248,000 nt of DNA from Octopus vulgaris (Eukaryota), in NCBI GenBank assembly GCA_951406725.2, contig OX597815.1:35484001-35732000 (forward strand), given 5' to 3'. Under the pieces are notes generated by a model. It had not been told where the DNA came from and did not search any database. It saw only the letters and a program-made list of their open reading frames with translations. Positions 19,565 to 243,560 of this stretch are shown piece by piece (within the stretch, counting starts at the first letter, position 1; each line of letters opens with the position of its first letter). Made by a program: the position numbers and the translations under genes.

Positions 19565-20255
<691 letters not shown>

Positions 20256-126539: not shown

Positions 126540-126608
<69 letters not shown>

Positions 126609-126612
<4 letters not shown>

Positions 126613-126980: not shown

Positions 126981-127131
126981 ATATAAAACTTCAATTATCC
127001 GCGCTAAAGCACGGGGGCGAAACCCCATGGTCGTAACCTCAACCGTGTCTTTTCTGGTGTGATTTTTGCTACACAGGTATCGGTTAAATTTTGAATAATC
127101 CATAACAAGATAATTCATTTATCCATTTCAT

Positions 127132-127187
<56 letters not shown>

Positions 127188-127895: not shown

Positions 127896-127951
<56 letters not shown>

Positions 127952-129817
127952 ATTATATATGTTTATGTTTGGCATTATTGGCTCAGACTTTGACTAATTT
128001 AATACAATCGATTAAGTAAATATCCTAGTAAATAGTTGTTGTTGACTAAGATATATTCAGGTATACGTAGTTTGTCCAGATATCGTTTGAAAGTTATGAG
128101 ATCTTTATATTTGACTTTGTTTTCGAGGGAGGGGGAAAACGAATGCATCGACCCCAGTACTCAACTGGTGCTTATTTTATCGACGCCGAAACGATAAAGG
128201 ACAAAGTCGACCTCGGCGGAATTTGAACTCAGAACGTGACGAGGGACGAAATACCGCTAAGCATTTCGCCCGGCGTGCTAACGATTCTACCAGCTCGTTG
128301 CCTTGTTTCCGAATAACATTCTTTTCTATTCTAGGTACATGGCCCGAATTTCTGGGTATGGAGGCCAGTCGATTAGATCGATCCAGTATGCAACTGGTAC
128401 TTAATTTATCGACCCCGAAAGGATGAAAAGCAAAGTCGATCTCGGCGGGATTTGAACTCAGAACGTAAAGACAGACGAAATACCTATTCCTTTACTACCC
128501 ACAAGGGGCTACACACAGAGGGGACAAACAAGGACAGACAAACGGATTAAGTCGATTACATCAACCCCAGTGCGTAGCTGGTACTTAATTTAACGACCCC
128601 GAAAGGATGAAAAGCAAAGTCGATCTCGGCGGAATTTGAACTCAGAACGTAAAGACAGACGAAATACCTATTTCTTTATTACCCACAAGGGGCTAAACAC
128701 AGAGGGGACAAACAAGGACAGACATAGGTATTAAGTCAATAACATCGACCCCGGTGCGTAACTGGTACTTAATTTATCGACCCCGAAAGGATGAAAGGCA
128801 AAGTCGACCTCGGCGGAATTTGAACTCACAACGTAACGCAGACAAAATACCGCTAAGCATTTCGCCCGGCGTGCTAAAGTGTCTGCCAGCTCGCTGCTTT
128901 GTTTCTGAGTAATATTAAGAAGGGAATAAAAACGCATGGCCTGTTGAGGAAAAGTAATTGTGTTGCAATGCGATTATGTTTGGTGAACCTGGATTGCGTA
129001 TAGAGGAGAATCCGAGCCTTTCCTGACCATTTGTGTAGACCAGTGGTTCTTATATATATAAGATTTTATTGTTCGAATTTATGTGCAATGAATTGTTTAT
129101 ACTTCTACAATACGCAAGATACTGTAATTTTGGTGGGACAGTTCCTAATAATATTTAATTTATAAAAATACAGTTAGATAATTTTTTTATATACAGTAAA
129201 TAACTATGGAGGTCCAGTAAAGTTAATAAAGGAATCACAGGGGTCCATAGGCAAAATATGGTTGAAAAACACTGCTGCAGATAGTCAACGGCCGATGAGT
129301 TTGACGTGGCTATAAGTTCTTAGGACTCTACCCAGATACATACATACATGCATACATACATACACACGTACGTACGTACGTAGTGAATAGCTTCCTAGAT
129401 TCTTAGTCAAGATTCGAACCCCTACGAGGTCCTTCCTATTCTTCTCGGCACTTGCGCTAATTTTTCGTTTCTTAGCTGCCTTGACCTAAGTTTGACTTGA
129501 ATGGTTAATGAAAGAAGAGAAACTAATATGTATGTGGCAGTAGACTCTCAAAAACTCGTTCTTGAAGAAAAAATGCCGAGAATAATAGAAAAGAATTCGT
129601 AGAAAAATCTAGACTGAGTTTCGAATCTAGGAAGCTATTCGAGGTTGGTAGGTAGTGTAATCTTTGTTTTTAATGTTCGGTAATAATAAAAACAATTTTA
129701 CTGTAATCTTATGGGTTACTATATACATTTGTAGAGTACAAATTTATTATTCTTATACAAGAATGTTGTTGACAGTGACTTCGAAGTTTCGGCCAGCTAA
129801 GCAATCGTCGAACTGCA

Positions 129818-139174: not shown

Positions 139175-139469
139175 CAGCTCATCCCATATGTTCTGTCCGA
139201 TTTTACCTTTTTTAAAATTGAATGAAATTTAATAGTATTTTAGAATGTCTAATGGAATTAAAATTATTTTTATGCATTTGTGTACATTTAAACTAATTAG
139301 ATATTATAATACAGAATAATAAAATTAAAATTTCTTTGAATAAAACCCTTTCTAACATGTAAGTATCCAAATAACATTTAAGGCACATAATGCTTTATGA
139401 GTACAAAAAAGGAAAGTCTGCAGCCGAAGCGACTCGAAACATACACTCAGAGATCTTCGATGCTGCCAT

Positions 139470-140110
139470 CCCGAACTACAACCGGGCTCTGGCTGCCAGC
139501 GATTTTAAGGATAGTATTAGTTACATACCAGACCCTATCCCCACCAAGGGAAAGCGCCACCGGAAAGTACTGTGGTTCACACTGCCATTCTCTTTAAGCA
139601 GTAGATAAGAACTTCCTTTGTTTAATTGATAGACACTTTCCTCGTACCAATATAGTTTACGAAATATTTAATAGACATACTCTGAGACTATCTTTTAGCT
139701 GTGCACCTAGATTAAAAAAAGATTTTAGTAGGTAGACCCAGACCCAAGACTGAAGCATGATGCTCATGTAGGGTTAACACAACTTGTCCACTAAACGGCC
139801 AATGCAATACAGAAACAGTTGTTTCCGAGGCAGAAGTACAGCTTCAGGACCCAATGGACAACCGATCGTGCAGAAATATGTGGAGGCAACGGAAGGCCCC
139901 TTCAGAACCCGCTATAATAACCACAAGTCCTCATTTAACATTCTAGAGAGACTAACGCCACGACCCAAGCCAAGCACAACTGGGCTTTAGAAGAAAGCAC
140001 CACGGAGTACAGCATAAAGAGGAAGATCATGGAAAGATGCAATCCGTACTTCAATAGTAGCAGGAAGTGCAGACTATACGTGGCTGAGAAGAGATCGATT
140101 TTAAAAGGTA
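139470..140110 (+). mobile_element. Penelope-like element C-terminal fragment (GIY-YIG)
   Basis: RKVLWFTLPFS, NIFNRHTLRLSFSC, KYVEATEGPFRTRYNNHKSSF. Confidence 0.75.
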
Positions 140111-146064: not shown

Positions 146065-146101
<37 letters not shown>

Positions 146102-148413
146102 CAAAATAAGCAACAAGGATATCCATAGTTAATGCAATACGATCGTTTCATGCGACTCCATTTAACTGATCAATGTAATCATTTCATTACATCAATTTAA
146201 AATGTAGAGCAATCTTCAGCTGCACAAAGACATAGAATTTAATTAAATTAGAAGGACACATTAGTATAATTTTACCTAAAATCTCCAACAGGATAAGGAG
146301 ATAGACAAAAAACATGTTTTACCAACATCATAGTTGTAACTTATCATAGTTGTAACTACACATTAGGTATAATTATACTAATGTGTCCATCTGTTCTAAT
146401 TTAATTAAATTCTATGTCTTTGTGCAGCTGAAGATTGCTCTACATTGTAATTTGATGTAATGAAATGATTGCATTGATCAGTTAAATGGAGTCGCATGAA
146501 ACGATCGTATTGCATTACCTCTGGATATCCTTGTTGCTTATTTTGATTTAAATCACTTTATTTTGAAATTGTATGGATAATACCGTACTAAATTCTGGTG
146601 CCTCAACCTAAGTACCATATTCATCTGAATCTAAATTTATATATATATATATATATATAATGTGTGTGTTTGTCACCCACCACCGCTTTCCAACCGGTGT
146701 TGGTGTGTTTACGTCCCCGTAACTTAGTGGTTCGAGAAAGGGATTAATAGAATAAGTACCAGGCTTTAAAAAAATTGTACTGAGGTCGACTCATTCGACT
146801 AAAAATTCTACAAGTCGGTGCCCCAGCATGGCTGCAGTCTAATAACTGAAGCAAGTAATAGATAAAAAGAATAGATGATTTGCCATAAACATCCCCAAGA
146901 AATAACGATAAAATAAATCAAATATTAATCAATGGCATAGTTAGTGTGTGCGGCCCGAAACAGCCCTTGTTTCCCCACCTGCTCACGGCCCCACCAATCT
147001 TATACAGGCTTATACAACAAACTCAAAATACCGCCCCACCATAATAGCGTCGCCCGGACGAACCGTCTCCAAGTACCCGCTCCCTAACTATTCTATTGAT
147101 ATTAATTCATGAGGTTCATGCAGAACCGTGAGACTCCAAACAATAATTTGTCTGTCCATTCTAAATACGTTCTGGAAGATTCTGGTCGCAGTTATTTTTC
147201 ATCATTGGAGAACATTTCCTTTTCGATAACGTCAATGACCAGTGTAAAAGAACTTAGCGACATCGTGGTGTTTCAACCTTTTTGAGTGTCTCCTCAGATA
147301 AAGCTACCCGGACCGATAATTCTAAAAGGAGTACAGGCCCTTGTTTATAGAAATCAGCAAACAAATTATTTACTGGTATATGTTTATGTCTGCGAAACAG
147401 ATGATAATTCATGAGGCACACACAAAAAGCGAGAATCCAAACAAAAAAGTATGTATTCATTCTCAAGGCATTTTGAACACAAACATCTTGTTCTTTTTGT
147501 TATTGGAGAAGAGCCTGTATTCTTGTTAGATTCATCGGGCTGACGGAGTAGCTTCGACTGAGATGCTCAATAAGGTCGAAACACCGTGGTTTCTCATGTT
147601 CCCTTACATTTGTGAATTGCATGTGTTTTGAACAGACATCGACTAAAGAGAGATATTCTCAGACAAAAAAGAAAAAAAACCACAAAGATCAGATATTCTC
147701 ATTAGAAACTTCTAGGATATAGGGTGCACTGAGTATGAATAAATACATCATTGTAAATCAAATATCTTAAATGAATCTATGAATGGATGACATCTTAACT
147801 ACGATGTAAATGATGGTTTTAATAAGAAAAGCTACAAGAAAAATATAGACAACAAAATAGAGTAAGAACATAAGTAAGAAATTAGTGGTGACGAATAAAA
147901 GCTAAACAGAAATTATTCATCACAACGGCTTTCATTCAACATGTTCAGTCTATGTATCTAAGATCTGAATGAAAGACATCGTTTTCTACAGAGGCATGCC
148001 ACCTACATCATCGCATGTCTGTTGACTCTGTCTATGAAGAATAGATGGTGCTGTTGTTTGCTTCCATATCAGCGCATTTGTTTGTGTGTGAATGTATGCA
148101 TGTGTATTTGTATATGTAAGCGTGTGCGTCAAGAATCGTGTCTGTTTGTCTCTTACGAAGAGAGAAAATATGGCAATCGCTGATTCCAGTCATTGTTTGA
148201 ATACACTTAATCTGGTTCTTTGCGTTCTGAGTTCAAATCCTGTTATAGCCTAGATGTGTGGTAGACTTCATTCGTCGCCCAGTTTAATACCATCACTTAA
148301 TTCTTGGCTACCTTTAATTGAGTCTATTCTATTGCAAGAATTCAGGCCACAGTGTCTCCTGCTTGATGATAACAGTATGTCTGTTTGTCTGTCTGTCTCT
148401 GTCTCTGTCTGTC

Positions 148414-164679: not shown

Positions 164680-165198
164680 GTGGGGTCATAGGGTTGTGAG
164701 GGTTGTAATATAATATTTATGGCCATACCTAGTCATGAGCTGTCAACTCACTCTATTCTTTTATTTAAGATAGACACAGTCGTCTAGGCTCAGATTTATT
164801 AGCTGATAAAGAGATATATGAATTAGAAATGAATTACAACCCTTACAATCCAATGGCTCCACTATACTCCATGTGATTCCTATAAGTTGTAGTCTATTCC
164901 TAGCTACAACAACAACAACATGAATTTCCTCCATCTTTTTACTCTGTTAAATTATTTAAGAAAAATTATATTAATGTGTCCTACTTGATAAAATTCCACT
165001 TATTTGGGCAACTGAAGATAGCACTGCATTTAAACTGATGTAATGAATGCATTGTTCAATTAAATGGAGACGCTAGAAACGGTCGTACTGCATTTGATAT
165101 TCTGTTGCTTATTTTGATTTTACTCACCTTACTTCGAGGTATGCGGATAATACCGGACTGACTTAGTGCTTTAACTTAAGTATCTAATTCAACTAAAT

Positions 165199-165263
<65 letters not shown>

Positions 165264-166115: not shown

Positions 166116-167127
166116 GAGATAGTAAAAAAGGGGATTTGGTTTACTTTCTCTGATCCTCTTTTCGTCGTGCGTAGGAACTTTCGCTTGTAGCGATGTGCTT
166201 TGGAATCCGGTGTATTTATAATTTATTCCGCGAGCGGATCTGATTTTTTATTCATTAAAGTACAGGTGCGTCTTGTTTTTCTGGTTGTCAAGTTTGTCGT
166301 TCTGCCTGGTTGGCTTCCTTGTGGGGTACGGGCATCAGTCTTTCCGGTTGATTGATTCTCTTAAAGTGTCATTTTGTTGTATTTGCTGATGTTCGGTTTC
166401 GATTTGTCTAGAGTTAGGCGACGTCAGCAACTAGCGTTTGTAAAATTTCATTGGTCTAGACATAGGTGACGTCGGCAATTGGTGTTTGTATGGTGATTTG
166501 GAGTTGCAGTTTCGAAACCCGGGTGGAAGACTTTTACTAAAGTATTTAAAATTGTTTGTTGTTCCTAGTTATTATTTTTGTTTTTGTGGAGAAATTGAAC
166601 CTTTTTCCCTTTTTCTCTTTAGTGTTTTTTCTTCTTTCTAAAGCTGTGCTTTATATTTTTTAATGAACACACTTTCCTTATTTAAACGGAATTGGGTTGA
166701 TAGAGAGGGAAGATATGGTATTTCAGGTTTATATTTACAGGGCATTGGTCTAGATGTTTGCTTACGGGAATTAGTCTGTCCCTCAAGGTTAAACTAATTT
166801 GACCTATGTAGTCTCCACCACACTCTCCACATTTGGGAACATAGACTAAGTTCTTCAAAGCACAGGGGAAGTGATTTTTTAATGGTAAAACTTTGACCTG
166901 ACCTAAATTTGTATGTTGAGCCCTCTAAGAGGAAGATGCAAGTTCTGCAGTTAGGGCGGTTGCGTATTTGGCTAATGAGGTTGTATTTTTGGTGGGTAAT
167001 TTGGCGCTGGTGAATAACTTTTTTTAGGGATTGCGGTTGTCTTTTGCTTTTAATAATCCAGTATTTCCAGTGCCTTTTCTATTCGTGGGTCCTTCATATG
167101 GAGGGGTATATTTTGGTGGGTGATGTT

Positions 167128-168010
167128 TTATGCTTCCATGTTCCTCAGAGTGTGTGTTGATATGAAAGATAAAGTTTTCAGTGTGTCATGGTGCCTTCTT
167201 GTTTTCCGTAATTCTTGGTTGTCTATCATTTTTGCGCATTCTATTCCGTTTTTTATTAGATTGGCCGGGTATTTTCTATCTAGTAATGTGTTTTTAAGTT
167301 CTTGGAGTCGCTTTTCTCGGGTTTCAGGATATGATGCAATCGTGCAAATTCTTCCAGCTAAGTTAAACGATATATTTATTTTAGTATGTTTTGGGTGGCA
167401 GGAGGAGAATAGAAGATATTGTTTTGAGACCGATGGTTTGAAGAAGATGTCGGTTTCAATCTTAGTATCTCTCTTTATTATTAAGATGGCCGGGAAGGGT
167501 AGTTGTTGGTGGTTGTATTCCATAGTGAATTGGATACTGTGATCAATGCTGTTGATTAAGTTTTTAAATTCTGTGAGTTGTTCAATGTTATGCGGCCAAA
167601 GGATGAAACAGTCATCCAGATAGCGTTTCCAGTTGGTAAGTAGGTATTTTTGGAAATTTTCCCCAAATTTTAATCTTGCGTGTTCGTATATTTGGACTTC
167701 CAAGTATGCCATGACAAGGTTGGCAAAAGTAGGTGCTACTCTCGTTCCCATCACCGTGCCCGATTTTTGTCTATAAGGGTTTTCGTTGAAATTGAAGAAG
167801 TTGTTCTGTAGAATGAACCTTATTCCTTCAACGATGAATTCTTTTCCAATTTGGTCAGGAAAGTCATTTGAGAATTTTTCAAGTCAGTATTGCTTGGCTA
167901 TTATTCCGAATTCGTGAGGAATCGAGGTGTAGAGGTTTATTACATCGAATGAAACCAGAAGGGAGTCCTTGCTGGTTTTGCTCGGGAGATACTTTAAAAA
168001 GTCCAGATCA
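167128..168010 (-). mobile_element. Penelope-like reverse transcriptase remnant
   Basis: GTRVAPTFANLVM, WKRYLDDCF, HSIQFTMEY, TDIFFKP, SCHPKHTKINI. Confidence 0.88.
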
Positions 168011-168089
168011 TCTCTTATAAAGCTTCGTATATGTTGGAGAATAGGTTTAAGGTGAAGATGCATATATATATATATATATTATTATTATA

Positions 168090-169014: not shown

Positions 169015-170272
169015 AACAGATCCTCTCATAAGTTCAGTTCGATTTTATCTTTTTTTTAATTGAATAAAATTTAATAGAATTTTAGAATATCTAATGGAAT
169101 TTAAAATTATTTTTATGCATTTGTGTACATTTAAACTAATTAAAAATTATTTTACAGAATAACAGAATTAAAATTTCTTTGATTAAAACCCTTTCTAACA
169201 TGGAAGTATCCAAAGAGCATTTGAGGCACATAATGCTTTATGAGTACAATAAAAGGAAACTCTGCAGCCGAGCAACTCGAAATATACACTCAGATTATGG
169301 GAAAGAATGCTTGAATCAAAGATGGTTTGCAAAATTCAGAAGTGGAGATTTCAACCTCAAAGATGAAGATCCAACAGGACTTCCCGTTGAGTTTGATGAT
169401 AAGCTCCTTAAGGTATTACTTGAAGAAAATCCTGCATTATCAGTTGAAGAATTTGGCAATAAAGCTTAGTTCAAACCACACAACTGTTCATCGTCATCTT
169501 CAACAACTTGGAAAGGTTCCTAAACTTGGAAAATGGGTGCCTCATGAATTGTCCGAAAACAACCGCAAATCCCGACTTGACATCTGCTCTTCTTTCCATT
169601 CCCGCGAACTCATTTCACCCTTTTTGGATAGACTTGTGACTGGTGACGAAAAGTGGATCTTCCATCGAAATGTTAAACGTTGTAAACAGTGGCTTGGTAA
169701 AAAGGAAAAAGTTCAACCACAACCGAGAAGGGAACTTTATGGGGAAAAGGTTCTTCTCTCTATCCGGTGGGATTGTAAAGGAGTAACTCACTTTGAATTG
169801 TTACCACCTAATGCAACAATCAAAGCCCAAGTCTACTGTCAGCAATTAGAGTATTTCAACCAAACTTTGAAGGAAAAGAGACCTGCTTTAGTGAATCGGA
169901 ATGGAGTGATGTTTCATGAGAACAATGCGCAACCCACACACAGAAGGTCGAAGAACTTGGGAAAAAATTCCTCATCCACCTTATTCTCCCGACCTTGCTC
170001 CTTCAGACTACCATTTGTTTCGTAGTTTACAGAATCATTTAGGGGACATAACTTTCGCAAGCCAGGAGGAGGTCGAAACTGACATTTCAGAGTTGTTCGC
170101 TTAGAAACCAAAAGAGTTTTACATTGATTGGCTTAAAAAGCTTGTAAGTAGATGGAAGGAAGTCATAGATAATCAGGGAAAGTACATTGATGATTAAATT
170201 TCGATTAAGTATAACATTTGACCACTTGTTTTCTTTATTCAAAATTCGGACAGAACTTATGGGATGACCTGA
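169015..170272 (+). mobile_element. Near full-length mariner (DD34D), inactivated
   Basis: HLRHIMLYEY HTH, WVPHEL, LVTGDEKW, FHENNAQP, HPPYSPDLAPSDYHLF; right TIR CGGACAGAACTTATGGGATGACCTGATA; 5' fragment at 139152-139460. Confidence 0.9.
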
Positions 170273-184520: not shown

Positions 184521-187500
184521 CTAGCAGAGATACCCGGCGTTGCCCGGTTACATTCAATAGAAGAATTAGACTTTTCTGTTATATATATATATATGGATAC
184601 ACAAACACATACACACACAAATATATGTATATTAATATAAATACATGAAAGTACATGAATTTTGTTAAAAAAAAGGGGATCTTGTATATACCTCCTGGCT
184701 GTTGAGATTATAACACCTCGTTGTAAACAATGTTCCTTGTTTTTCCTTGTGGAGCATATACAAGAAGGTTTCTTTTGGTTCCTACTCTTGAGCAGCCAAC
184801 ATACAGTTGCCTATGCGAGAAGCAGGGCTCTTCCAAGAGAAGACCAGCTACAGAGAGGGTTTGACCCTGAGATTTGTTAATGGACATGGCAAAGCTGACA
184901 CGAAGGGGGAATTGCAGTCTTCTGAATGTAAATGGAATTTCTGCTCCTGATGGAGTAAGAGGAAATCTTGGAATAAAGACGTCATCACCTTTTCCACATC
185001 CAGAAAGAATGATCGCCTCGATAACGTGTGATATCATTTTCTTTATCACCAGTCGTGTTCCATTGCAAAGTCTTGGTGGTTCCAGATTGCGGAGTAGCAT
185101 TACAGGAGTTCCAACTTTAAGTGGTAATATGTGTGGAGGTAGTCGAAGAGGCTCCAGTGAATTGAGAAATTCAGGAGGATAGTTCACAACTTCATTTATA
185201 TCTGGAATTGTATCAACAGACTTGTAAGTGTGTCTAGTGCCGGGAAGAGAATGCATTAGCTGTTGATTAATTTTGTTAACAGCGACGTTTTTTGGAGCTA
185301 ATATGGCTCTTTCACACCGCCAATTGTGATTTTGGTAGTTTTGTGTGAAGTTGGGAAAGACTTTGTTTTTGAGGTCATCTACAGAATGAACAACAGAGGA
185401 AAATGACCACATGTTCCATTTGTCCTGCAGCATCGAGAGGCATCTTGCCTTCACCAAGTGTCAAAATGTCGTGTGCAAACTTTGTGGACATTTTGTCGCC
185501 TTGTAGCTGAGCTCTCATGTTAGTGGTGAGACTAAAGATTGCAACATGATGACATAGGGTAGAGGACTTTAGGCATGCTTGAACTTCATCAGCTCTAGTG
185601 CCTTTCGGAATGATAGGAAGAGTTTGCCTGAAATCACCTGACAACAGAAGCGTTACACCTCCCATTGGAGCCTGACAGTCACGGATGTCTTTCAGGGTTC
185701 TATCTAATGCTTCCAAAGCTCCCTTGTGAGCCATAGTGCACTCAGCCAGACAATTACATAACACATTTTAAGTACTTGTCCCTGATCTGAGCTTTTGTTG
185801 ATGTTGCATGAGAGGGAGTTTAAAAGTTGAGTGTGCTGTCCTGCCACCGGGTAACAAAGTAGCTGCAATGCCAGAGGAGGCTACAGCTACTGCAATGTCC
185901 TGATGCTACCTAACTTCTGCAAGGAGAAGCTTTGTAATAAATGTTTTTTCTGTCCCTCCAGGAGCACCGAGGAAGAAGATTGGTCCCTCGCGTTGGCGTA
186001 CACTGTTAAGAATAGTTCTGTAGGCCTGCAGCTGGTCCGGAAGTAATTTAGGCTCATTTTCAACAATGTACTTTGAAAGCGCTTGAGTGTCGTAGGTTGT
186101 TTCACGAATGACAGCAGTGGGAAGGCTATTTGACCTTGACCTGAATGCTTATGGCAGGCCATACGTCGACAATTCATTTCCACCCAGTTTATCAATTCTG
186201 TCTTCAACGTCAATGAGTGTTTTGTTATAGATTTCATTGCTGATACCCTCCATGTCAGGATAGAGCAGTTGAGCTTGGCGCTGAAGGGGACAATGTTTTT
186301 GAGATTCCGGTTCGAATGTAAGGCAGGATTGAAAGTGTTCCCAACAGTTATTAGTTGTAGTGGTAGAGTGTTTATGCCGAATATGTACGTATGTATATAT
186401 ATGTATGCATGCCTGTATATATGTACAAAATCCACTGAGAAGGCTTTTGATGGTCTGAAGCTACAGCAGAAGACACATGCCAAGTCACCACACAGTGGGA
186501 CCGAACCCAGGACCATGTGTTTGGAACGTAGTTTGTTACCACACAGCCACACCTGCCCCTACGTATGTGTGTGTGTGTGCGTGTGTGTTATGGGTAGATA
186601 TGTTATGCATGTATATATGTGTATATATATGTGTACATATTACATGTACATCTATATATATACATCTACACATAAAATACAAAATACAAAGTTATATCAT
186701 GATATCGCTAGTGATAACAATACTCAAAATATATAACAGACTGGAATTGTAGGCCCGTCTCTTGCAATTTCGATCAATTGGATCTTGTCCTCCCTCTTGT
186801 ATAGAAGTGTACGGCTGCAGCGAAATTCAATTTTGGACTTTCTTCTTTCGAAGGCATTTTAACAAAAATGCTTCCGTAAAGACAGTGAAAATATTGTCAA
186901 TTACCCCAAACAGGGACATAATTCAATTTTTAAACAATAACCAAAGCCCCTTCTCCGAAAGGGGGAGGGTTACGGTTTACAATTATTTAACAAATGCAAC
187001 ACAACAACGTTTCCCTGACGAGGAACCAACAAACGTGATTACAATAGTCAAACAGTAATAATAATAACAACAAACCTTTTTAATTTATCCCCATTTATGT
187101 GAAACCGCTTATTCAAGTTCAAGTCATTGATGCAATTTTATACGAATTGCTAATACACACACACACACACACACACACACATAATAAGAGTGAAAAATTG
187201 AATATTAATTTGATTAATATGAATTGAAAACCAGTGGTGTAGCATATAAGACCATAGCGGATCTTCCTCTAGCAAAAAGGATGACAACTATTAATGGCTC
187301 ATCCCTGTTATATAATACTTTCACTTTAATAGTTTCACACTTGCAAAGAGAAAGTGTGGTGGTAATAGCAGGAGTAAACCACTTGAAATGAGAGAGGCAA
187401 ATCGTAAAATATTGAGTTTTCTTGAATTTTTGCTTAATTGAGGGTCAAACTGAAAAAATTTATATGCCATGACCCAATCGAATCTACTTCGAAAAATCAT

Positions 187501-192527: not shown

Positions 192528-192893
192528 ATGTATGTATGTATGTATGTATGTATGAATGGATTTGCCTTTTATCCATTCGGATTCAGTACCGAAAAACATA
192601 ATGTGTGTCTTGCCAAGGAGGCGGCAGGTTAGCAGAACTGTAAGGACGTCGGACCGGTTGCTTTGCAGTATTTATTCCGGCTCTTTGCGTTCTGAGTTCA
192701 GATCCCACCGTGGCCTACTTGGGTGATAGGTTTTAACTCGTCATTTGGTCCAACACCACCATTTGGTATTTCCGGTGACTTTAGCGGAGTCTTATCTGTT
192801 GCAAGCATACGGAACAGGCTTCCGTTGTGGGGATCGTTTCCACCAGTCTCGGACTCCTTCCCACCTGAACAAAACATGCACACACACACACAT

Positions 192894-192938
<45 letters not shown>

Positions 192939-193058
192939 CATTCATACTTTGAATTTGGTGATACTAGCTGTGGCTTCTAGCTCGCTCTGATACTGAGTTG
193001 AGTTGGTGCCTTCTAGTATCTCAAAATTCAATATTCAATCATTCATGATTGTTAGTAT

Positions 193059-193150
193059 CCTGCGCTGATGAAAGAAGAAGTCTGGGTAAAGTAGAGTTAT
193101 CTAATTCTTATGATTTCCTAAGACTTGATCTCGAAACGTACGTCCGTAGG
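193059..193150 (+). ncRNA. Type I hammerhead ribozyme, copy 1
   Basis: CCTGCG/CGTAGG stem I, CTGATGA, AAGA-AG-AAGTC...GACTT-GA-TCTC stem II (A-C at the base), GAA-ACGTACGT-C; C17 at 193144. Confidence 0.72.
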
Positions 193151-193645
193151 TGACTTAAAACTGTATGATAGATTGCCGTTAATTCATTCTCTTTTACCTG
193201 TTTGTGTTTGCCTTTCAAATGCTGTGCCTTTACTGTGATCTCCCTTTTAGTAGAAGAAATAGCTATAATCTCTTTGACTGCTATTTCTAAATTCGGTGTG
193301 TGGTAAGGCAATTCGTTGCTAAACCCTTAATTGCTTAGTATTACTTAAATTTTCCTCGAATGAGGCTTTTACATGCCGAAGACTACTTGGTGTAATTGAT
193401 AATTGTTCCAAATTAATTAATTTCACCCTTCATTGTTACTCATAAACCATATTCATCCCAGTAAATGACCACAGCACTTTGTCCTGGCTACACGCGGGTG
193501 GGAAGGGACTGGTGACACAAGCTTTCATTCATACTTTGAATTTGGTGATACTAGCTGTGGCTTCTAGCTCGCTCTGATACTGAGTTGAGTTGGTGCCTTC
193601 TAGTATCTCAAAATTCAATATTCAATCATTCATGATTGTTAGTAT

Positions 193646-193737
193646 TCTGCGCTGATGAAAGAAGAAGTCTGGGTAAAGTAGAGTTATCTAATTCTTATGA
193701 TTTCCTAAGACTTGATCTCGAAACGTACGTCCGTAGG
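193646..193737 (+). ncRNA. Type I hammerhead ribozyme, copy 2
   Basis: Same as copy 1 with TCTGCG stem I; C17 at 193731. Confidence 0.7.
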
Positions 193738-193923
193738 TGACTTAAAACTGTATGATAGATTGCCGTTAATTCATTCTCTTTTACCTGTTTGTGTTTGCCT
193801 TTCAAATGCTGTGCCTTTACTGTGATCTCCCTTTTAGTAGAAGAATAGCTATAATCTCTTTGACTGCTATTTCTAAATTCGGTGTGTGGTAAGGCAATTC
193901 GTTGCTAAACCCTTAATTGCTTA

Positions 193924-193966
<43 letters not shown>

Positions 193967-194566
193967 GTACGTCAAAGTCGATCTCGGCGAAATTTGAACT
194001 CAAAACGTAAAGACAGAAGAAATACAGTTAAGCATTTCACCCGACGCGCTAACGTTTCTGCCAGCTCACCGCCTTAGAAAGTAAAAGTTGATATTTTCTT
194101 TATTCTTATAGCTAAAGCGTTACTCCCTTACTTTTACTGACAGGAAATTTCGTAACATTTTACCTCATAACTATTTTTCTACTAAATATTGTTCAATGCG
194201 ACTAGTGATTCTGAATTTCTCATGCATTTTTCTATCATTTAAGCCCAAGAAAGGTATACTTTTAATTCAAATTTAAATAGTTTATGTTAATTGAAGGTGA
194301 ATAGGTGCCTTACTACTCCCCTTGAGGTCGTAGATATTTTGACGTTACTTTTTTTTCTACTGAACCAAATCTTAAACTATTTATGCCAAAGTGTAGCTGA
194401 GGAAGTGTCCTCTTTAAAACTATTAAGTTTGCAATTTAGTTGAGAACTGAATTAGTGAAGTTTGGAAGCTGCTGTGATTGACGAAATGGTGCACTTAAGA
194501 ATATATTCAACCACTACCGTGGTTGAATGATACATGTATATGCATATACATACATGCATACATATA

Positions 194567-201589: not shown

Positions 201590-204500
201590 GATACTTTGAT
201601 ACTTTGATAGGTTTCGGCCATTATTGGCCCAGGCCATGTCTAACTTAATAGCACCACCTGGTGAAGTCTTTCAAGTCAGAATTTGGGCACTATGGCCCAC
201701 TCAAGTAGAGAGTTATTGTTTGCAGAGACATATCCGGGTGTAGGGGGTTTATCCGGGATTTCTTGAAAGAATCTGTCCAAAGACTTCTTGAACCCTATAG
201801 GGTCAGTTTCTGTTTTAATGTGTTTTGGTGTAATGTTAAAGAGAGCGGGGCCAATTGAGGTGAAATAATTGTGCCGTATTGTTGTTATGAGATGAGAGTG
201901 CGATTTTTGTTTTGGGCGGATGGCACGGGGCCCAAGCCTTGGATGTACCTTAAAGGTGATGCCAACATCATTTGGGCAATGCTGATGGAATATTTTCCAC
202001 ATCATGCAGATGATGTAGCGCTCACGACGACGTTGGAGAGAATAGAGTTTTAGCTTTTCTAGTCGACCCCAATAGTCGAGGCCTGTCATGCCATCTATCT
202101 TTTTTGTGATTGCCCTTTGAGGTGCTTCAACTTTTATGATACCTTGTATTGTGTGGGGAGACCACAGTGGACAACAGTATTCAAGGTGGGGTCGGACAAA
202201 AGTGGAGAAGAGAAGGATAATGGTGTGGATATCTCTCGACTGGAAAGTTCTGAGAATCCAGGAACACATTCTGCGGGCCATGTCAACTTTGGTGTTTATA
202301 TGAGTGGCCCAGCTTACGTTGTTGTCCACAATTACTCCCAAGTCTCTGATGTTGTTGGACGCCGCGAGAGTTTCACCTGAAGGAAGGGAGTATGGGAGTT
202401 TCAGGGCATCCTCTTTTCCAAAGTGGATTAGCTCAAATTTATCCTCGTTCAGCAGCATATTGTTTTTTTCTGCCCATTGGATAACAGCCAGTAGATCTGA
202501 CTGAAGGCATGTCCGGTCACCCGCCTCATTTATGACCTTCTGTAGCTTGGAGTCATCTGCAAAGATTTTTATGTTGCTGTGCTTGATGATGTCATTAATG
202601 TCATTAATGTAAATGATGAAAAGAAGTGGGCCCAGCACAGTGCCTTGCGGAACGCCACTACTGACTTTGGCTGGGCTTGATTTTACCCCTTCAACTACAA
202701 CATGTTGAGATCTGTCTGTCAGGAAACACTTAATCCATTTCAGTAACTTTCCAGAGACACCAATGTTGGATAGTTTTTTCAATAGGATCTTGTGATCGAC
202801 CCTGTCGAAGGCCTTACTGAAATCAAGGTAGATGACATCGGTGTTGGAGCCCTCTCCCAAAGCTCTCAAAATGTCCTCAAAGTGATGCAGGAGCTGCGTT
202901 AGGCAGTCCCTTCCATTACGGAACCCATGTTGGTTGGAGATCAGCCGTCTGTTGCTTTCCAGAAATTGGGTTATTCGAGATCTCACCACCCTCTCAAATA
203001 CCTTGATGATATGAGAGGTGAGTGAGATCGGACGGTAATTCACTGCAAGGGACTTGTTTCCCTTTTTGAAAACTGGGACAACAGACTGGGACAGAAGGTT
203101 TTTTGGAATATAGCCAGCATCCAGTGAGTTTCTCCACAGATTAGCAAGGGGAGATGCAAGTTGGTGTCGACACACCTTCAGGACACAAGCAGGGAACCTA
203201 TCGGGGCCTACTGCTGAATTGTGTTTTATTTCGTTTATCGCCGCTAAGACATCAGGGGCACTAAATGTTATGTCCGATATAGTGTGTTGGGGGTTGACAT
203301 CACTGATACAGCCCAGATCGGCCATATCAGGATTGCTGAAAACAGAGCAGTATTGTTTCTGCAGTATCTCGGCCATGGATTTGGCATTATCTTGGAGAGT
203401 GCCAGTTTCGTCAATTAGAGGGCCTACAGTGGAGACAGTGACCCTGCGTTTCCTCGCAAATGAAAAGAACACTTTGGGGTTGAGTTTGATTTTTTCAATG
203501 GCCCACTTCTCCTCAGCTGATCTTTGGTTATTGATGAGGGTCTTCATGCATTGTTGGAGGTTATATTTTTTGGATTCAAGCAGTGCGATAGCCGTCGAAT
203601 GTGTGTGCTGCTGTTGGCAGTACTTTAGTTTGTTAATTTTTTTGTTTGTTCTTTTTATTTTTCTGATAATGGTTTTTCTGTTTTGGGGGATTCTGCACTT
203701 TTTGTTCACAGGTCTTGGTGGGGAGTGTTTTGCACATATGTCTGTGACGGTGTCTACAAAGATCTGCCAAGATGTTTTATGGTTGGTGGAGATGTGTGTA
203801 TGTGTAAAGGACCAGTCAACATTTGATAGCTCGTTCCTGATTGCATCCCAGTTGGCTTTATGGAGATCCATGTTGTCAAATGGGTGGGCTGGAGGAAGGT
203901 CACTAGGATTAGCTTTCGGCTGGTGGAATTTCATGTTACAGAGAACCATGTCATGGTCTGAAAGAAGGGTTTTTTCCACTGTAACGTTATGTATAGTGTT
204001 AGTGTGGTTACTAAACACTAGGTCCAAAATGTTCTGATGTCTTGTTGGTGCAAGGACAAGTTGGGACAAGAAAAACTCATTCGTAAAGTCGAAAAGTGAC
204101 TCTGCTGCTTCTTTGTCAGCGGTTGAGGCGGGAGTGCTTGGTTTCAAACAGTTTGTAGTCCAGTCAACACAGGGTAGATTGAAGTCTCCCATCATGAGTA
204201 TGTTGCTAGAATGGCACTGTTGAATAAAGCACTTAATGCTGTTGAGGCATTCTTTAAAGCACAGTATGGGTGTTTGGGGCGGCCTATAGAGCCCAATTAC
204301 TGTCAGGTCATTGGCTTTGTTGTGCACGGTGACTGATTCACAGTAGCCGTTGGAGAATATACTATTTCCATCTGCCGTAAATGAATCATGCAGGAAAATG
204401 GCAGTTCCACCCTTCCTCCTGCCGATACGATCCGCGCGGATGGTTGTGAAATTCTTCACTCTCACTTCGGCTTCCAAGTGGGAGTTGTCAAGGTGGGTCT

Positions 204501-204900
204501 CAGTGAGAATGAAGAAAGGGATGTGGTGTGAATGGTTACCAACCCAGTCTTCAATGAATTGGACCTTCCATTTTTGTGCATTGATGGAAGGGCTGACACC
204601 TTGTGCATTGAGTAGGAATGTGGAGGTTAGTGTAGTGGCTGGTTTTGACTGTTGCAGGGGGCTTGGATTTTGTGTGTGTGTTAGTGGCAGCAATGTGGGG
204701 AATTGGTGCACTGGGGTAATAGCATAGGATGGTGTTGAGTGATGGCTAGAATGTTTTTGTGTATCTCTTTTGCCATGTTCAACATGGCTAAAAAGAATTT
204801 TCCTGCTTAGGGAGCAGTTTTTGGCTGGAGGTGTGGTTGCACTGTTGGATAGGGTTGTAGTTTCCACTTTTGTTGTTGTTGTTTTTGTGTCTTCCTGAAA
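201590..204900 (-). mobile_element. CR1-type LINE with uninterrupted ORF2 (APE endonuclease plus RT)
   Basis: ORF 201676-205005 (N-terminal ~35 aa are microsatellite): LTETHL, GLYRPP, MGDFN, LDLVF, SDHDMV; [38 protein letters not shown]; 3' (TATCAAAG)n. Confidence 0.95.
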
Positions 204901-205045
204901 AGACACATATATATATACATATATATACATATACATATAAATATATATATATATACATACATATACATATATATACATATATATATATATATATATTGTA
205001 TACATATATATATATGTATATATATTATATATATATATATATATG

Positions 205046-215072: not shown

Positions 215073-216347
215073 CATAAGGGACTAAAGCCATCTGAATATG
215101 GCTAGGGACAGGGCAGGGTGGTGGGGGTGTTACTGTTGCATTTAGCCCCAGGCGAACATCGACGTCACCAGAAAGGCTCGACACCGTCACGGTGCCCTAA
215201 ACCTGCAAAGGGAGGTAATTCCCCGATGAAGCGGAAACCACACACGGACCATGGTTTCAAGGTGTATTGCCTATCATCGGCGTGTGGTAGGCCTCCGCTT
215301 CCTCGACGAATTCTCACTATGCAGGATTTCTTATATAGATTTTCAAGCAAAATACATTTGCTGATTTCGAAAATCTGTTCGAAAGCAATAATAATTCTCT
215401 AAAAGGGATATAGACAGTAACTGCTCGATAACATAAGGGACTAAAGCCATCTGAATATGGCTAGGGACAGGGCAGGGTGGTGGGGGTGTTACTGTTGCAT
215501 TTAGCCCCAGGCGAACATCGACGTCACCAGAAAGGCTCGACACCGTCACGGTGCCCTAAACCTGCAAAGGGAGGTAATTCCCCGATGAAGCGGAAACCAC
215601 ACACGGACCATGGTTTCAAGGTGTATTGCCTATCATCGGCGTGTGGTAGGCCTCCGCTTCCTCGACGAATTCTCACTATGCAGGATTTCTTATATAGATT
215701 TTCAAGCAAAATACATTTGCTGATTTCGAAAATCTGTTCGAAAGCAATAATAATTCTCTAAAAGGGATATAGACAGTAACTGCTCGATAACATAAGGGAC
215801 TAAAGCCATCTGAATATGGCTAGGGACAGGGCAGGGTGGTGGGGGTGTTACTGTTGCATTTAGCCCCAGGCGAACATCGACGTAACACCCCCACCACCCT
215901 GCCCTGTCCCTAGCCATATTCAGATGGCTTTAGTCCCTTATGTTATCGAGCAGTTACTGTCTATATCCCTTTTAGAGAATTATTATTGCTTTCGAACAGA
216001 TTTTCGAAATCAGCAAATGTATTTTGCTTGAAAATCTATATAAGAAATCCTGCATAGTGAGAATTCGTTGAGGAAGCGGAGGCCTACCACACGCCGATGA
216101 TAGGCAATACACCTTGAAACCATGGTCCGTGTGTGGTTTCCGCTTCATCGGGGAATTACCTCCCTTTGCAGGTTTAGGGCACCGTGACGGTGTCGAGCCT
216201 TTCTGGTGACGTCGATGTTCGCCTGGGGCTAAATGCAACAGTAACACCCCCACCACCCTGCCCTGTCCCTAGCCATATTCAGATGGCTTTAGTCCCTTAT
216301 GTTATCGAGCAGTTACTGTCTATATCCCTTTTAGAGAATTATTATTG

Positions 216348-242375: not shown

Positions 242376-242399
242376 CGAACTATGTAAAGGTATAGTTAC

Positions 242400-243560
242400 T
242401 TTGTGGTTAATACCTTGGACCAATCTATAACGGACTTGCTATTGCCCTTTATCCGTAAATCTAATTCCCTATCTAACTTGTTTAGAATAGAATCTAAGAT
242501 ACTCTTACTAATAATTCCAATTTCCAGCTTTGCTGGGTGAATTAGTCTGCATTTGTGGTTTCTACTAAAATTGGCTTTGTGGTCCATTAGGGTAATAAAG
242601 GGCAGACGTAGGGGAAAGTATTCGATCCTATCACTAACTTTAAGGTTGGTAGCGATTTCGATATTCATCTCTTTATATCAGTTAGTACATACATACATAT
242701 ATACATACATACATACATACATACATACATACATACATACATACATACATACATACATACAAACATACATACAAACATACATGCATGCATGCATACATAC
242801 ATACAAACATACATACAAACATGCATACATACATACATACGTACAAACATACAAACATACATACAAACATACATGCATACATACATACATACATACATAC
242901 ATACATACATACATACATACGTACGTACGTACGTACATACATACATACATACATACATACGTACATACGTACATACAAACATACATACATACATACATAC
243001 ATGCATGCATACATACATACATACATACATACATACATACATACATACATACATACATACATACGTACATACGTACATACAAACATACATACATACATAC
243101 ATACATGCATGCATACATACATACATACATACATACATACATACATACGTCCGTACGTACGTACATACATACATACATACATACATACATACAAACATAC
243201 ATACATACATACATACATACATACATACATACATACATACATACATACGTACGTACGTACATACATACATACATACATACATACATACATACATACATAC
243301 ATACATACATACATACATACATACATACATACATACATACATACATACATACATACATACATACATACATACATACATACATACATACATACATACATAC
243401 ATACATACATACATACATACATACATACATACATACGTACATACATACATAAGTTAGTATTTGCTTTTTTATAAGTGTCTGTAATGTTAGAAAGTAGTCG
243501 TTTGTAAAGATTTTTTTCTACAGCATGGAGGTCTTTTGTTTTGTGGGGCTTCACGAAAAT
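242400..243560 (-). mobile_element. Penelope-like RT N-terminal fragment split by a ~780-bp (CATA)n tract
   Basis: LLSNITDTYKKANTN | (CATA)n | NIEIATNLKVSDRIEY..PFITLMDHKANF..CRLIHPAKLEIGIISK. Confidence 0.7.

What the first reader, a model, noticed from the sequence alone, without database searches (positions are those of the whole stretch)
192938..193926. Retrozyme-like tandem: two hammerheads 587 nt apart in a non-coding, (TA)n-embedded element
Seen: a non-coding unit repeated head-to-tail, each copy with a full type I hammerhead fold (stem I, CUGAUGA, stem II, GAAA, ACGUACGU palindrome, GUC site); predicted cleavage sites at 193144 and 193731. Established: metazoan non-LTR retrozymes and Penelope pLTRs use tandem hammerheads to excise monomers that can circularise, and palindromic stem III allows cleavage as a dimer. 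Inference: transcription would release a 587-nt monomer or circRNA, longer than the roughly 150-400 nt I recall for animal retrozymes, mobilised in trans by Penelope RT/GIY-YIG (remnants at 75.5, 139.5, 167 and 242 kb). Caveat: A replaces G at core position 10.1 in these two copies.
Basis: partly seen in the sequence, partly recalled or inferred. Interest (0 to 1): 0.85.

Follow-up and report, generated by a model that had tools for sequence, protein, structure and literature searches.

The report
Hammerhead-bearing Penelope-type non-autonomous retroelement
This is a real but ordinary member of a known class: a non-coding, hammerhead-ribozyme-carrying parasite of Penelope-like retrotransposons (an animal "retrozyme"), inserted as a 1.7-unit partial tandem into a (TA)n microsatellite.

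Summary
A 587-nt non-coding unit is repeated 1.68 times (192938-193926) between (TA)18 and (TA)19. Each copy carries a type I hammerhead with the stated core, and the C17 sites at 193144 and 193731 are 587 nt apart. A10.1 faces C11.1 in both copies. A third copy at 19.7-20.2 kb, about 90% identical, has the canonical G10.1-C11.1.

The motif is not chance. A descriptor scan gave 7 strict hits in three unrelated families against 0.025 expected. Rfam RF00163 aligns the same boundaries, but below its gathering score, because helix II is about 60 nt long.

The insertion anatomy is that of Penelope-like elements:
- a partial tandem;
- a head-to-head inverted arm at the second locus;
- 9 of 10 element boundaries lying in (TA)n;
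- 3' junctions at internal UAU sites downstream of the hammerhead, and none at a cleavage site.

So every template RNA was continuous across the hammerhead, either as a circle or as an unprocessed multimer.

PLE RT/GIY-YIG remnants are confirmed at 75.5 and 166.6-168.1 kb, but not at 139.5 or 242 kb. A 587-nt unit lies within the published range of 51-972 bp. Cleavage and circular RNA remain untested.

Verdict: new member of a known kind, modest interest.

The parts
192900..192935 (.). Left (TA)18 microsatellite flank (half of the target site)
   Evidence: TRF; boundary check
192938..193524 (+). Copy A, full 587-nt unit (unit positions 1-587)
   Evidence: Self-BLAST and alignment; no ORF above 67 aa
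193059..193150 (+). Hammerhead A, type I. Stem I 193059-64/193145-50; CUGAUGA 193065-71; 61-nt helix II 193072-193132; GAAA 193133-36; ACGUACGU 193136-43; C17 193144. A10.1.C11.1 mismatch.
   Evidence: Sequence; descriptor; RF00163 17.1 bits, E 0.1; fold
193525..193926 (+). Copy B, unit positions 1-402. It ends at ...CTTAGTA|(TA)n, the same 3' junction as the copy at 20192.
193646..193737 (+). Hammerhead B, C17 at 193731. Identical to A except C to U at the outermost stem I pair (C-G becomes U.G).
193145..193731 (+). Predicted 587-nt monomer if both hammerheads cleave. Circular MFE -155.8 kcal/mol, z = -5.2 against 100 dinucleotide shuffles.
   Evidence: prediction only
193341..193524 (+). Internal segment (unit 404-587) present once, between the two 402-nt repeats. 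It is contiguous with unit 350-403 at the second locus too, so it belongs to the element.
193925..193962 (.). Right (TA)19 microsatellite flank
19676..19834 (-). Second locus, inverted arm: reverse complement of unit 350-515. Its 3' junction (...CCATAT|) abuts the (TA)n at 19570-19674.
19832..20192 (+). Second locus, direct arm: unit 41-404, about 90% identical to copy A. It is joined head-to-head to the inverted arm with a 3-nt overlap. Its 3' junction abuts the (TA)n at 20190-20251.
19912..20002 (+). Hammerhead C with canonical G10.1-C11.1. Perfect 6-bp stem I (CCUACG/CGUAGG); C17 at 19996.
   Evidence: RF00163 23.6 bits, E 7e-4

Best explanation
The element is a non-autonomous retroelement of the Penelope-like (PLE) system. 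That is the class called animal non-LTR retrozymes.

Structure. The 587-nt non-coding unit carries one type I hammerhead of the dimer-dependent kind: a 6-bp helix I, an 8-nt palindromic helix III, and an unusually long helix II of about 61 nt.

How the 193-kb copy arose (inferred). A PLE RT/GIY-YIG enzyme acting in trans nicked a (TA)n tract. Reverse transcription was primed at an internal UAU site about 196 nt downstream of the hammerhead (unit position 404). It then copied 1.68 unit lengths of an RNA that was continuous across the hammerhead site. That RNA was either a religated circle or an unprocessed multimeric transcript. The product has a pLTR-like layout of 402 + 185 + 402 nt.

How the 19.7-kb copy arose (inferred). 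The same process extended both cleaved DNA strands, which gave two head-to-head arms.

Predicted behaviour on transcription. The two hammerheads could pair through ACGUACGU into a double hammerhead and cut after C17 at 193144 and 193731. [quoted passage not shown] In this copy catalysis is probably weakened by the A10.1.C11.1 mismatch.

Shown versus inferred. Shown: the anatomy, the motif, the junctions and the PLE remnants in the window. Inferred: the enzyme partner, the form of the template RNA, cleavage and circularisation.
For: Motif:
- Complete core, and 6 contiguous stem I pairs in all three copies.
- 7 strict hits against 0.025 expected by chance.
- RF00163 full-length alignments at the same boundaries.
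- 95% of cells are paired in the proposed register, against 25-49% in slid registers. There is one compensatory change (10.3-11.3, G-C to A-U) and four pair-preserving single changes.
- Between copies about 10% diverged, the core, helix III and the 3' strand of stem I do not vary.
- The double hammerhead is the cofold MFE of the isolated segments.

PLE-type insertion:
- Partial tandem.
- Inverted arm whose 55-nt overlap with the direct arm is identical, and which shares 3 substitutions against copy A. That indicates a single event.
- 9 of 10 boundaries of the three hammerhead families abut (TA)n of 8 or more repeats. Such runs cover only 1.9% of the window.
- The same 3' junction (unit 404) occurs at two independent loci, and another lies at unit 515. 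All are at UAU sites and none is at a cut site.

PLE presence:
- Remnants at 75481-76008(-) and 166623-168066(-), E 4e-91.
- Related autonomous PLE contigs carry palindromic-helix-III hammerheads 80-145 nt after the ORF. One contig ends in (TA)n about 100 nt after its hammerhead.

Literature:
- PLE insertions form partial tandems with an adjacent inverted 5'-truncated copy, and show microsatellite bias, (TA)n in the Naiad clade (PMC8557442).
- A purified PLE protein cleaves AT-rich DNA on both strands, extends both, initiates reverse transcription internally downstream of the hammerhead, and does not need hammerhead cleavage in vitro (PMC11167929).
- Retrozymes are non-coding tandem type I hammerhead repeats that co-occur with PLEs (PMC7229834; 10.64898/2026.07.22.740005).
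Against: - No expression, cleavage or circle data can be obtained here.
- No autonomous PLE with a pLTR homologous to this unit is in the window. BLAST and nhmmer find only the three copies, and no hammerhead lies next to the PLE remnants.
- Only two loci are available, so the junction rules rest on few events.
- The Rfam scores are below gathering.
- A.C at 10.1-11.1 in both copies at this locus.
- Folding energies of the isolated hammerhead segments are not exceptional (z = -0.3 to -1.7).
- The 989-nt MFE does not form the double hammerhead.
- Covariation with 3 sequences is not significant (173 of 500 shuffles reach the observed value).
- The global fold is not conserved in copy C (7 pairs kept, 8 broken).
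- Source organism unknown.
Confidence: 0.75

Rival explanations
1. Internally deleted autonomous Penelope-like element (pLTR - deleted ORF - pLTR). On this reading it is a one-off deletion derivative, not a dedicated non-autonomous retrozyme family.
For: The 402 + 185 + 402 layout mimics pLTR-internal-pLTR. PLE remnants lie in the same window. Retrozymes are reported to be sister to pLTRs of PLEs (10.64898/2026.07.22.740005).
Against: No coding remnant is present: ORFs are 67 aa or shorter, and tblastn with 12 full-length PLE proteins gives no hit in the unit. A second locus, 10% diverged, carries the same non-coding sequence across the 402|403 boundary, so the short form itself was propagated.
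Confidence: 0.12
2. DNA-level tandem duplication or a small satellite carrying a fossil, inactive hammerhead. No RNA-mediated origin for the tandem and no RNA processing today.
For: Only 1.68 copies. A.C at 10.1-11.1. Rfam scores below gathering. A neighbouring hammerhead family (126.7-128.2 kb) is duplicated together with a flanking (TA)n and a SINE fragment, which looks like a DNA-level duplication.
Against: An A-B-A layout bounded on both sides by (TA)n is not what a simple tandem duplication gives. The right junction is identical to that of an independent locus. The second locus has a twin-arm structure typical of two-strand priming.
Confidence: 0.08
3. TA-targeting DNA transposon, MITE or Helitron. 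The hammerhead-like motif would be incidental.
For: TA-rich targets. An inverted repeat at 19.7-20.2 kb. A Pif1-helicase fragment and a mariner transposase fragment occur elsewhere in the window.
Against: The 193-kb copy has no terminal inverted repeats: its ends are TTTCATTCATAC... and ...TTGCTTAGTA. The inverted arm at 19.7 kb runs contiguously across unit 403|404, the end point of the direct copies, so that point is not a fixed DNA terminus. There is no Helitron CTRR end with a GC-rich hairpin. Three unrelated families share the hammerhead and the same junction anatomy.
Confidence: 0.03
4. Chance occurrence of hammerhead-like strings in AT-rich repetitive DNA.
For: The core boxes are short. 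Large Rfam scans show nothing.
Against: 0.025 strict hits expected against 7 observed. None of the 107 metagenome occurrences of the same boxes has more than 3 stem I pairs. Substitutions between the copies preserve pairing.
Confidence: 0.01

Closest known systems
Metazoan non-LTR retrozymes (Cervera & de la Pena 2020, PMC7229834; Li et al. 2026 preprint, 10.64898/2026.07.22.740005)
   Same: Non-coding head-to-tail repeats, each with a type I hammerhead. 6-bp helix I and a short palindromic helix III that implies action as a dimer. Co-occurrence with PLEs. The predicted monomer is highly self-paired (z = -5.2).
   Different: Only 1.68 units at this locus, where tandem arrays can be much longer. 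Helix II is about 61 nt where the canonical one has 4 bp. No recognisable loop-loop tertiary contacts. The unit (587 nt) is above the 170-400 nt of the 2020 paper but within the 51-972 bp of the 2026 survey. Expression and circles are untested.
Hammerheads in pseudo-LTRs of Penelope-like elements (Cervera & de la Pena 2014, PMC4209133) and PLE insertion anatomy (Craig et al. 2021, PMC8557442; Frangieh et al. 2024, PMC11167929)
   Same: Hammerhead inside the terminal repeat. Palindromic 15.x-16.x positions. Longer-than-canonical helix II. Partial tandem. Adjacent inverted 5'-truncated copy. AT-rich or (TA)n target. The 3' end of the insertion lies downstream of the hammerhead, which fits internal RT initiation.
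   Different: No RT/GIY-YIG ORF. [quoted passage not shown] Helix III is a full 8-nt palindrome and not the minimal form. Helix II is far longer than the reported 6-8 bp. The 30-40 bp 'tail' signature was not identifiable.
Newt satellite 2 and Schistosoma Sm-alpha hammerhead repeats (classical animal type I hammerheads; named from established knowledge and PMC7229834, PMC4209133)
   Same: Genomic repeats with type I hammerheads whose weak helix III requires a double-hammerhead conformation.
   Different: Those are high-copy satellites or SINE-like families with a compact helix II. Here there are few copies in the window, a long helix II, and PLE-type junctions.
Plant LTR retrozymes (Cervera et al. 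2016, PMC4918200)
   Same: Non-autonomous. Hammerheads in both terminal repeats. A monomer of several hundred nt is predicted to circularise.
   Different: The plant elements have type III hammerheads, true LTRs with PBS/PPT and 4-bp target duplications, and are mobilised by Gypsy elements. None of these features is present here.

Membership tests
Hammerhead ribozyme, type I | Conserved core C3-U4-G5-A6-N7-G8-A9, G12-A13-A14, A15.1-U16.1, H17 | tested here: met
   CUGAUGA, GAAA, A15.1...U16.1 and C17 are present in all three copies.
Hammerhead ribozyme, type I | Three helices around the core, with helix I open-ended | tested here: met
   6 contiguous stem I pairs. A long imperfect helix II is recovered by MFE folding. 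Helix III is a 2-bp/palindromic monomer form or an 8-bp dimer form. 95% of cells are paired.
Hammerhead ribozyme, type I | G10.1-C11.1 pair | tested here: not met
   A.C in copies A and B (193072/193132 and 193659/193719). G-C in copy C (19925/19984).
Hammerhead ribozyme, type I | Reaches the Rfam RF00163 gathering score (34 bits) | tested here: not met
   23.6 bits (copy C) and 17.1 bits (copy A), as full-length alignments with a 56-57-nt insertion in helix II. No hit in larger searches.
Hammerhead ribozyme, type I | Site-specific self-cleavage after H17 | not testable with these tools
   Needs a transcription/cleavage assay.
Animal non-LTR retrozyme | Non-coding head-to-tail repeats, each with a type I hammerhead | tested here: met
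   1.68 units, two hammerheads 587 nt apart, no ORF above 67 aa.
Animal non-LTR retrozyme | Unit size within the reported range | tested here: met
   587 nt, against 170-400 nt (PMC7229834) and 51-972 bp (10.64898/2026.07.22.740005).
Animal non-LTR retrozyme | Expressed as linear and circular monomer RNA | not testable with these tools
   No transcriptome for the unknown source organism.
Animal non-LTR retrozyme | Co-occurrence with PLEs in the same genome | tested here: met
   PLE RT/EN remnants at 166623-168066(-) and 75481-76008(-).
PLE-type insertion (non-autonomous PLE) | Partial tandem that forms pseudo-LTRs | tested here: met
   402 + 185 + 402 layout.
PLE-type insertion (non-autonomous PLE) | Adjacent inverted 5'-truncated copy | tested here: met
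   Present at the 19.7-kb locus, not at the 193-kb locus. The arms are identical in their 55-nt overlap.
PLE-type insertion (non-autonomous PLE) | AT-rich or microsatellite target | tested here: met
   All four fam1 boundaries, and 9 of 10 boundaries across the three families, lie in (TA)n of 8 or more repeats. Such runs make up 1.9% of the window.
PLE-type insertion (non-autonomous PLE) | Sequence homology of the unit to the pLTR of an autonomous PLE of the same genome | tested here: inconclusive
   No similarity to anything else in the 248-kb window. The rest of the genome is not available.
PLE-type insertion (non-autonomous PLE) | 30-40 bp 'tail' extension at one end | tested here: inconclusive
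   Two alternative 3' junctions (unit 404 and 515) lie 111 nt apart. There are too few copies to define a tail.
Autonomous Penelope-like element | RT plus GIY-YIG ORF between the repeats | tested here: not met
   No ORF and no tblastn hit in the unit.

The most novel reading that the evidence does not exclude
The (TA)n tracts at the junctions may be partly products of the insertion and not only its targets. Every 3' junction seen (unit 404 twice, unit 515, and the equivalents in two other hammerhead families) lies at an internal UAU(A) site of the RNA. A telomerase-related PLE reverse transcriptase might copy such a site reiteratively and so seed or lengthen (TA)n microsatellites. That would help explain 125 (TA)n runs in 248 kb. 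A milder corollary: the shared A10.1 in both copies, together with the absence of any boundary at a cut site, would mean that these 'retrozymes' spread from unprocessed RNA and that hammerhead catalysis is dispensable.
Probability: 0.07. Interest if true: 0.75.

Novelty: new member of a known kind. Interest (0 to 1): 0.32.

Why it matters
The locus adds a clean, young (0.5% diverged) example of a hammerhead-bearing PLE parasite that standard Rfam annotation misses, because its helix II is about 60 nt long. Two further families in the same window share that architecture.

The junctions give small-sample in vivo support for the in vitro picture of PLE integration: cleavage of AT-rich DNA, extension of both strands, internal initiation downstream of the hammerhead, and a template not cut at the hammerhead.

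It does not change what is known about retrozymes. Its practical use is as a seed for a lineage-specific covariance model, and as a natural G10.1 versus A10.1 pair for cleavage assays.

Tried and rejected
- Rfam at the gathering score over the whole window, and at E of 1-10 or less over 17 kb and 1 kb, gave no hammerhead. The model appears only in 151-nt searches. All 8 Rfam searches are used, so hammerhead B was not scored separately.
- An exact 23-mer of the hammerhead in metagenome contigs gave 0 hits. The box pattern with a 45-75 nt gap gave 107 hits, all judged chance: stem I has 3 pairs or fewer, and the count is of the order I estimate for chance. No relatives were found outside the window, so no cross-species covariation could be done.
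- The source organism was not identified. The exact look-up of the intact LINE ORF found nothing. The best homologue is 46% identical and comes from unnamed ENA/Tara metagenome contigs.
- Conservation of the global fold was rejected as evidence: 7 pairs kept and 8 broken in copy C.
- The double hammerhead in the full 989-nt MFE was not predicted.
- A relaxed search for hammerheads flanking the PLE remnants at 75.5 and 167 kb found nothing.
- Pfam RVT_1 missed the 167-kb PLE RT. tblastn with PLE proteins was needed to find it.
Motifs in their ORFs recalled PLE-like proteins to me, but this was not verified.
- Helitron and MITE readings were rejected on end structure.
Full report
OBSERVATION

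A 587-nt unit occupies 192938-193524. Its first 402 nt are repeated at 193525-193926. The two copies differ by one substitution and one 1-nt indel, so they are 99.5% identical. The block sits between (AT)18 at 192900-192935 and (TA)19 at 193925-193962. No ORF inside the unit exceeds 67 aa.

Each copy holds a complete type I hammerhead. In copy A:
- stem I: 193059-64 (CCUGCG) pairs with 193145-50 (CGUAGG);
- core: CUGAUGA at 193065-71;
- helix II: 61 nt, 193072-193132;
- GAAA at 193133-36;
- palindrome ACGUACGU at 193136-43;
- C17 at 193144.

Copy B is the same, shifted by 587 nt, with C17 at 193731. In both copies A10.1 faces C11.1. It lies at 19912-20002, with C17 at 19996, and it has the canonical G10.1-C11.1.

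IS IT MORE THAN CHANCE?

I wrote a descriptor with four requirements: CUGANGA; a closed helix II of up to 120 nt; GAAA; and helix III, U, H, followed by at least 4 contiguous stem I pairs. It returned 11 hits in the window. Seven of these have 6 contiguous stem I pairs and a 6-nt insert between A15.1 and U16.1. Forty order-1 Markov simulations of the window gave a mean of 0.025 hits of that strict class.

The seven strict hits fall into three unrelated sequence families:
- this one, with three hammerheads;
- a family at 126.8 and 127.6 kb;
- a family at 146.1-146.5 kb.

As an outside control, the pattern CTGATGA-N45-75-GAAACGTACGTC matches 107 metagenome contigs. By my rough estimate that is of the order expected by chance, and none of the matches has more than 3 stem I pairs.

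Rfam found no hammerhead at gathering thresholds across the window, nor at E of 1-10 or less in 17-kb and 1-kb searches. When only 151 nt are searched, RF00163 (Hammerhead_1) aligns full length (model 1-45) at exactly the same boundaries. It scores 23.6 bits (E 7e-4) for the 19.9-kb copy and 17.1 bits (E 0.1) for copy A. Its only structural complaints are a 56-57-nt insertion in helix II and, for copy A, the non-standard 10.1-11.1 pair. So the motif is genuine but lies below the curated cut-off of 34 bits.

CONSERVATION BETWEEN COPIES

The 19.9-kb copy is about 10% diverged from copy A. The catalytic boxes, helix III, C17 and the 3' strand of stem I do not vary. The substitutions fall mainly in helix II and in the 5' strand of stem I.

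In the proposed structure 95% of cells are paired, against 25-49% when the 3' partners are slid by 1-3 columns. There is one compensatory change (10.3-11.3, G-C to A-U) and four single changes that keep pairing. One of these is G.U to A-U in stem I. With three sequences this is not statistically significant: 173 of 500 shuffles reach the observed value.

Folding energies of the isolated segments are unremarkable (z = -0.3 to -1.7). Co-folding two copies of each segment gives the classical double hammerhead as the MFE. It has an 8-bp intermolecular ACGUACGU helix III and stem I formed in trans. The energies are -52.8 against 2 x -22.6 kcal/mol for copy A, and -47.6 against 2 x -19.7 for copy C. 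In the MFE of the whole 989-nt locus the double hammerhead is not formed.

The predicted 587-nt monomer (193145-193731) is strongly structured as a circle: -155.8 kcal/mol, z = -5.2 against 100 dinucleotide shuffles. That global fold is not conserved in copy C, where 7 changed pairs are kept and 8 are broken.

WHAT THE SURROUNDINGS ADD

The second locus (19676-20192) also lies between (TA)n tracts, and it is not a simple copy. A direct arm (unit 41-404, 19832-20192) is joined head-to-head, with a 3-nt overlap, to an inverted arm (reverse complement of unit 350-515, 19676-19834). The two arms are identical over their 55-nt overlap. They share three substitutions relative to copy A, so they arose in one event from one source.

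The inverted arm runs contiguously across unit 403|404. This shows that the 185-nt internal segment belongs to the element, and that position 403/404 is not a fixed DNA terminus. Yet both direct copies, at independent loci, end at that same position (...CTTAGTA|TATA...). The inverted arm ends at ...CCATAT|(AT)n.

Across the three hammerhead families, 9 of 10 element boundaries abut a run of (TA)n with 8 or more repeats. Such runs cover 1.9% of the window in 125 runs. The other two families show the same layout:
- At 146.1-146.66 kb, (TA)n, an inverted arm, a direct arm and (TA)n, with a hammerhead in each arm.
- At 126.6 kb, (TA)n, an inverted partial copy and then direct copies.
- At 164.92-165.2 kb, a 74%-identical and decayed relative of the 146-kb family, 5'-truncated, whose 3' end again runs into (TA)n.

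No boundary in any family coincides with a hammerhead cleavage site.

INTERPRETATION

This is the insertion signature described for Penelope-like elements (PLEs): partial tandems that create pseudo-LTRs, an adjacent inverted 5'-truncated copy, and microsatellite target bias, which is (TA)n in the Naiad clade (PMC8557442).

It also matches the biochemistry of a purified PLE protein (PMC11167929). That protein cleaves AT-rich DNA on both strands and extends both. It starts reverse transcription at internal RNA sites downstream of the hammerhead. It does not require hammerhead cleavage in vitro, and its hammerhead is protein-assisted.

The non-coding tandem with type I hammerheads and a palindromic helix III is the definition of animal non-LTR retrozymes (PMC7229834). 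A 2026 preprint argues that these are non-autonomous derivatives of PLE pLTRs (10.64898/2026.07.22.740005).

I therefore read the 193-kb locus as a single target-primed insertion into a (TA)n tract. It started at unit 404, about 196 nt 3' of the hammerhead. It ran for 1.68 unit lengths on an RNA that was continuous through the hammerhead site. Whether that RNA was a religated circle copied in rolling-circle fashion, or an unprocessed multimeric transcript, cannot be decided from the sequence.

Both copies carry A10.1, so the mutation was already in the template. If the template was a circle, an A10.1 hammerhead had to cleave. If it was an unprocessed multimer, catalysis was not needed.

THE ENZYME PARTNER

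A search of protein-cluster representatives with the GIY-YIG ORF at 75.5 kb returned 700-780-aa proteins. Pfam run on five of the hits found GIY-YIG in all five and RVT_1 in four. tblastn with 12 full-length proteins of this set maps PLE remnants to 75523-75900(-), which is EN only, and to 166673-168066(-), which runs from RT through EN with E 4e-91. With all 150 listed hits (plus their cluster members) the two regions extend to 75481-76008 and 166623-168066. No hammerhead flanks the two confirmed remnants, and nothing else in the window resembles the 587-nt unit. Mobilisation by a PLE is therefore inferred from anatomy and is not demonstrated.

Two metagenome contigs encode related intact PLE ORFs, and each carries a hammerhead 80-145 nt after the stop codon:
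- L001, hammerhead at 2910-2940: CUGAAGA-U-[4 bp]-U-GAAA, with a 6-nt quasi-palindrome.
- L002, hammerhead at 2655-2685: the known U3-A8 core variant, with an AACGUU palindrome.

L001 ends in (TA)n about 100 nt after its hammerhead. This shows the same 3' module in autonomous relatives, but with a short helix II.

COMPARISON WITH WHAT IS KNOWN, AND NOVELTY

The element passes the structural tests for a type I hammerhead except for the G10.1-C11.1 pair, which fails in copies A and B, and the Rfam gathering score. It passes the structural tests for a non-LTR retrozyme and for a PLE-type insertion. It is not an autonomous PLE.

The 587-nt unit is longer than the 170-400 nt of PMC7229834. It lies inside the 51-972 bp range of the 2026 survey, so the length is not a novelty.

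The distinctive traits are these:
- helix II is 56-64 nt in all three families of this window, against 4 bp in canonical animal hammerheads and 6-8 bp in PLE min-hammerheads (PMC4209133);
- helix III is a full 8-nt palindrome;
- the 10.1-11.1 pair is relaxed (G-C, A.C, G.U and U.U across the copies and families).

These make it a lineage-specific flavour of a known kind, not a new kind.

LIMITS

- The source organism is unknown. The window has 37% GC, and the best LINE homologue is 46% identical, from marine and other ENA metagenome contigs.
- No eukaryotic genome or transcriptome collection was available, so copy number, expression, circles and cleavage are all untested.

Noticed in passing
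126603-128199: Second hammerhead family. The core is CUGAAGA with G10.1.U11.1, helix II is about 56 nt, and helix III is ACAUGUGU. C17-equivalents are at 126917 and 127681. The block starts at the (TA)n of 126542-126609 with an inverted partial copy: 126603-126755 is the reverse complement of 127597-127749. The roughly 750-bp 'tandem' (126712-127431 against 127464-128199, 97.3% identical) includes an internal (TA)n and a SINE fragment. It may therefore be a DNA-level duplication or a read-through co-mobilisation.
   Followed up: partly
146099-146660 and 164917-165262: Third hammerhead family. The layout CUGAAGA-U...U-GAAA has U.U at 10.1-11.1, and helix III is ACGAUCGU. Two head-to-head arms (85% identical) lie between (TA)n tracts, each with a hammerhead (146428-146509 on + and 146219-146138 on -). 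A 74%-identical, decayed, 5'-truncated relative at 164.92-165.2 kb ends in (TA)n at the homologous position. It shows U-A at 10.1-11.1 and a flipped 10.2-11.2 pair (U-A to A-U).
   Followed up: partly
81052-81087 (-): Compact hammerhead of the published PLE min-HHR type: CUGAUGA, one unpaired A, a 5-bp helix II (GGCUG/CAGCC) with G10.1-C11.1, GAAA, an ACGU palindrome and a 5-bp stem I. Rfam does not detect it even in a 241-nt search. No PLE ORF is adjacent.
   Followed up: partly
166623-168066 (-) and 75481-76008 (-): Degraded Penelope-like element ORFs. The first runs from RT through GIY-YIG (E 4e-91 to a 724-aa PLE protein). The second is a GIY-YIG remnant only. Pfam RVT_1 missed the RT.
   Followed up: yes
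201676-205005 (-): Intact 1109-aa LINE ORF (APE endonuclease plus RT). The best database relative is only 46% identical. Further LINE fragments lie at 42.6, 77.3-78.4, 136.6 and 199.3 kb.
   Followed up: partly
e.g. 128140-128600, 193973-194075, and dozens more: Very abundant tRNA-derived SINE-like repeat, often in short tandem or partial copies. One copy lies immediately 3' of the right (TA)19 flank of the finding, and another SINE-like segment lies 5' at about 192556-192860.
   Followed up: no
whole window: Very high microsatellite load. There are 125 runs of (TA)n with 8 or more repeats in 248 kb (1.9% of bases), plus long (TG)n, (TACA)n and (ATAG)n tracts. These produce many spurious miRNA-family matches in Rfam (mir-297, mir-466 and others).
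   Followed up: partly
184711-185457 (-) and 169327-170022 (+): A Pif1-type helicase 2B-domain fragment, possibly a Helitron remnant, and a mariner-type transposase fragment (Pfam).
   Followed up: no
139390-139990 (+) and 242396-242668 (-): Short ORFs whose motifs recalled PLE-like or GIY-YIG proteins to me (from memory, not verified): ...VLWFTLPFS..., ...ATEGPFRTRYNNHKSSF..., ...KCRLIHPAKLEIG.... They were not matched by the C-terminal-EN PLE probes. They could belong to another clade, for example one with an N-terminal EN. This is untested.
   Followed up: partly
215318-216056: Three copies of a weak AT-rich match to the U3-A8 hammerhead variant (UUGAAAA...GAAA) inside a repeat. Stem I is mostly wobble pairs, so this is probably chance.
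   Followed up: no
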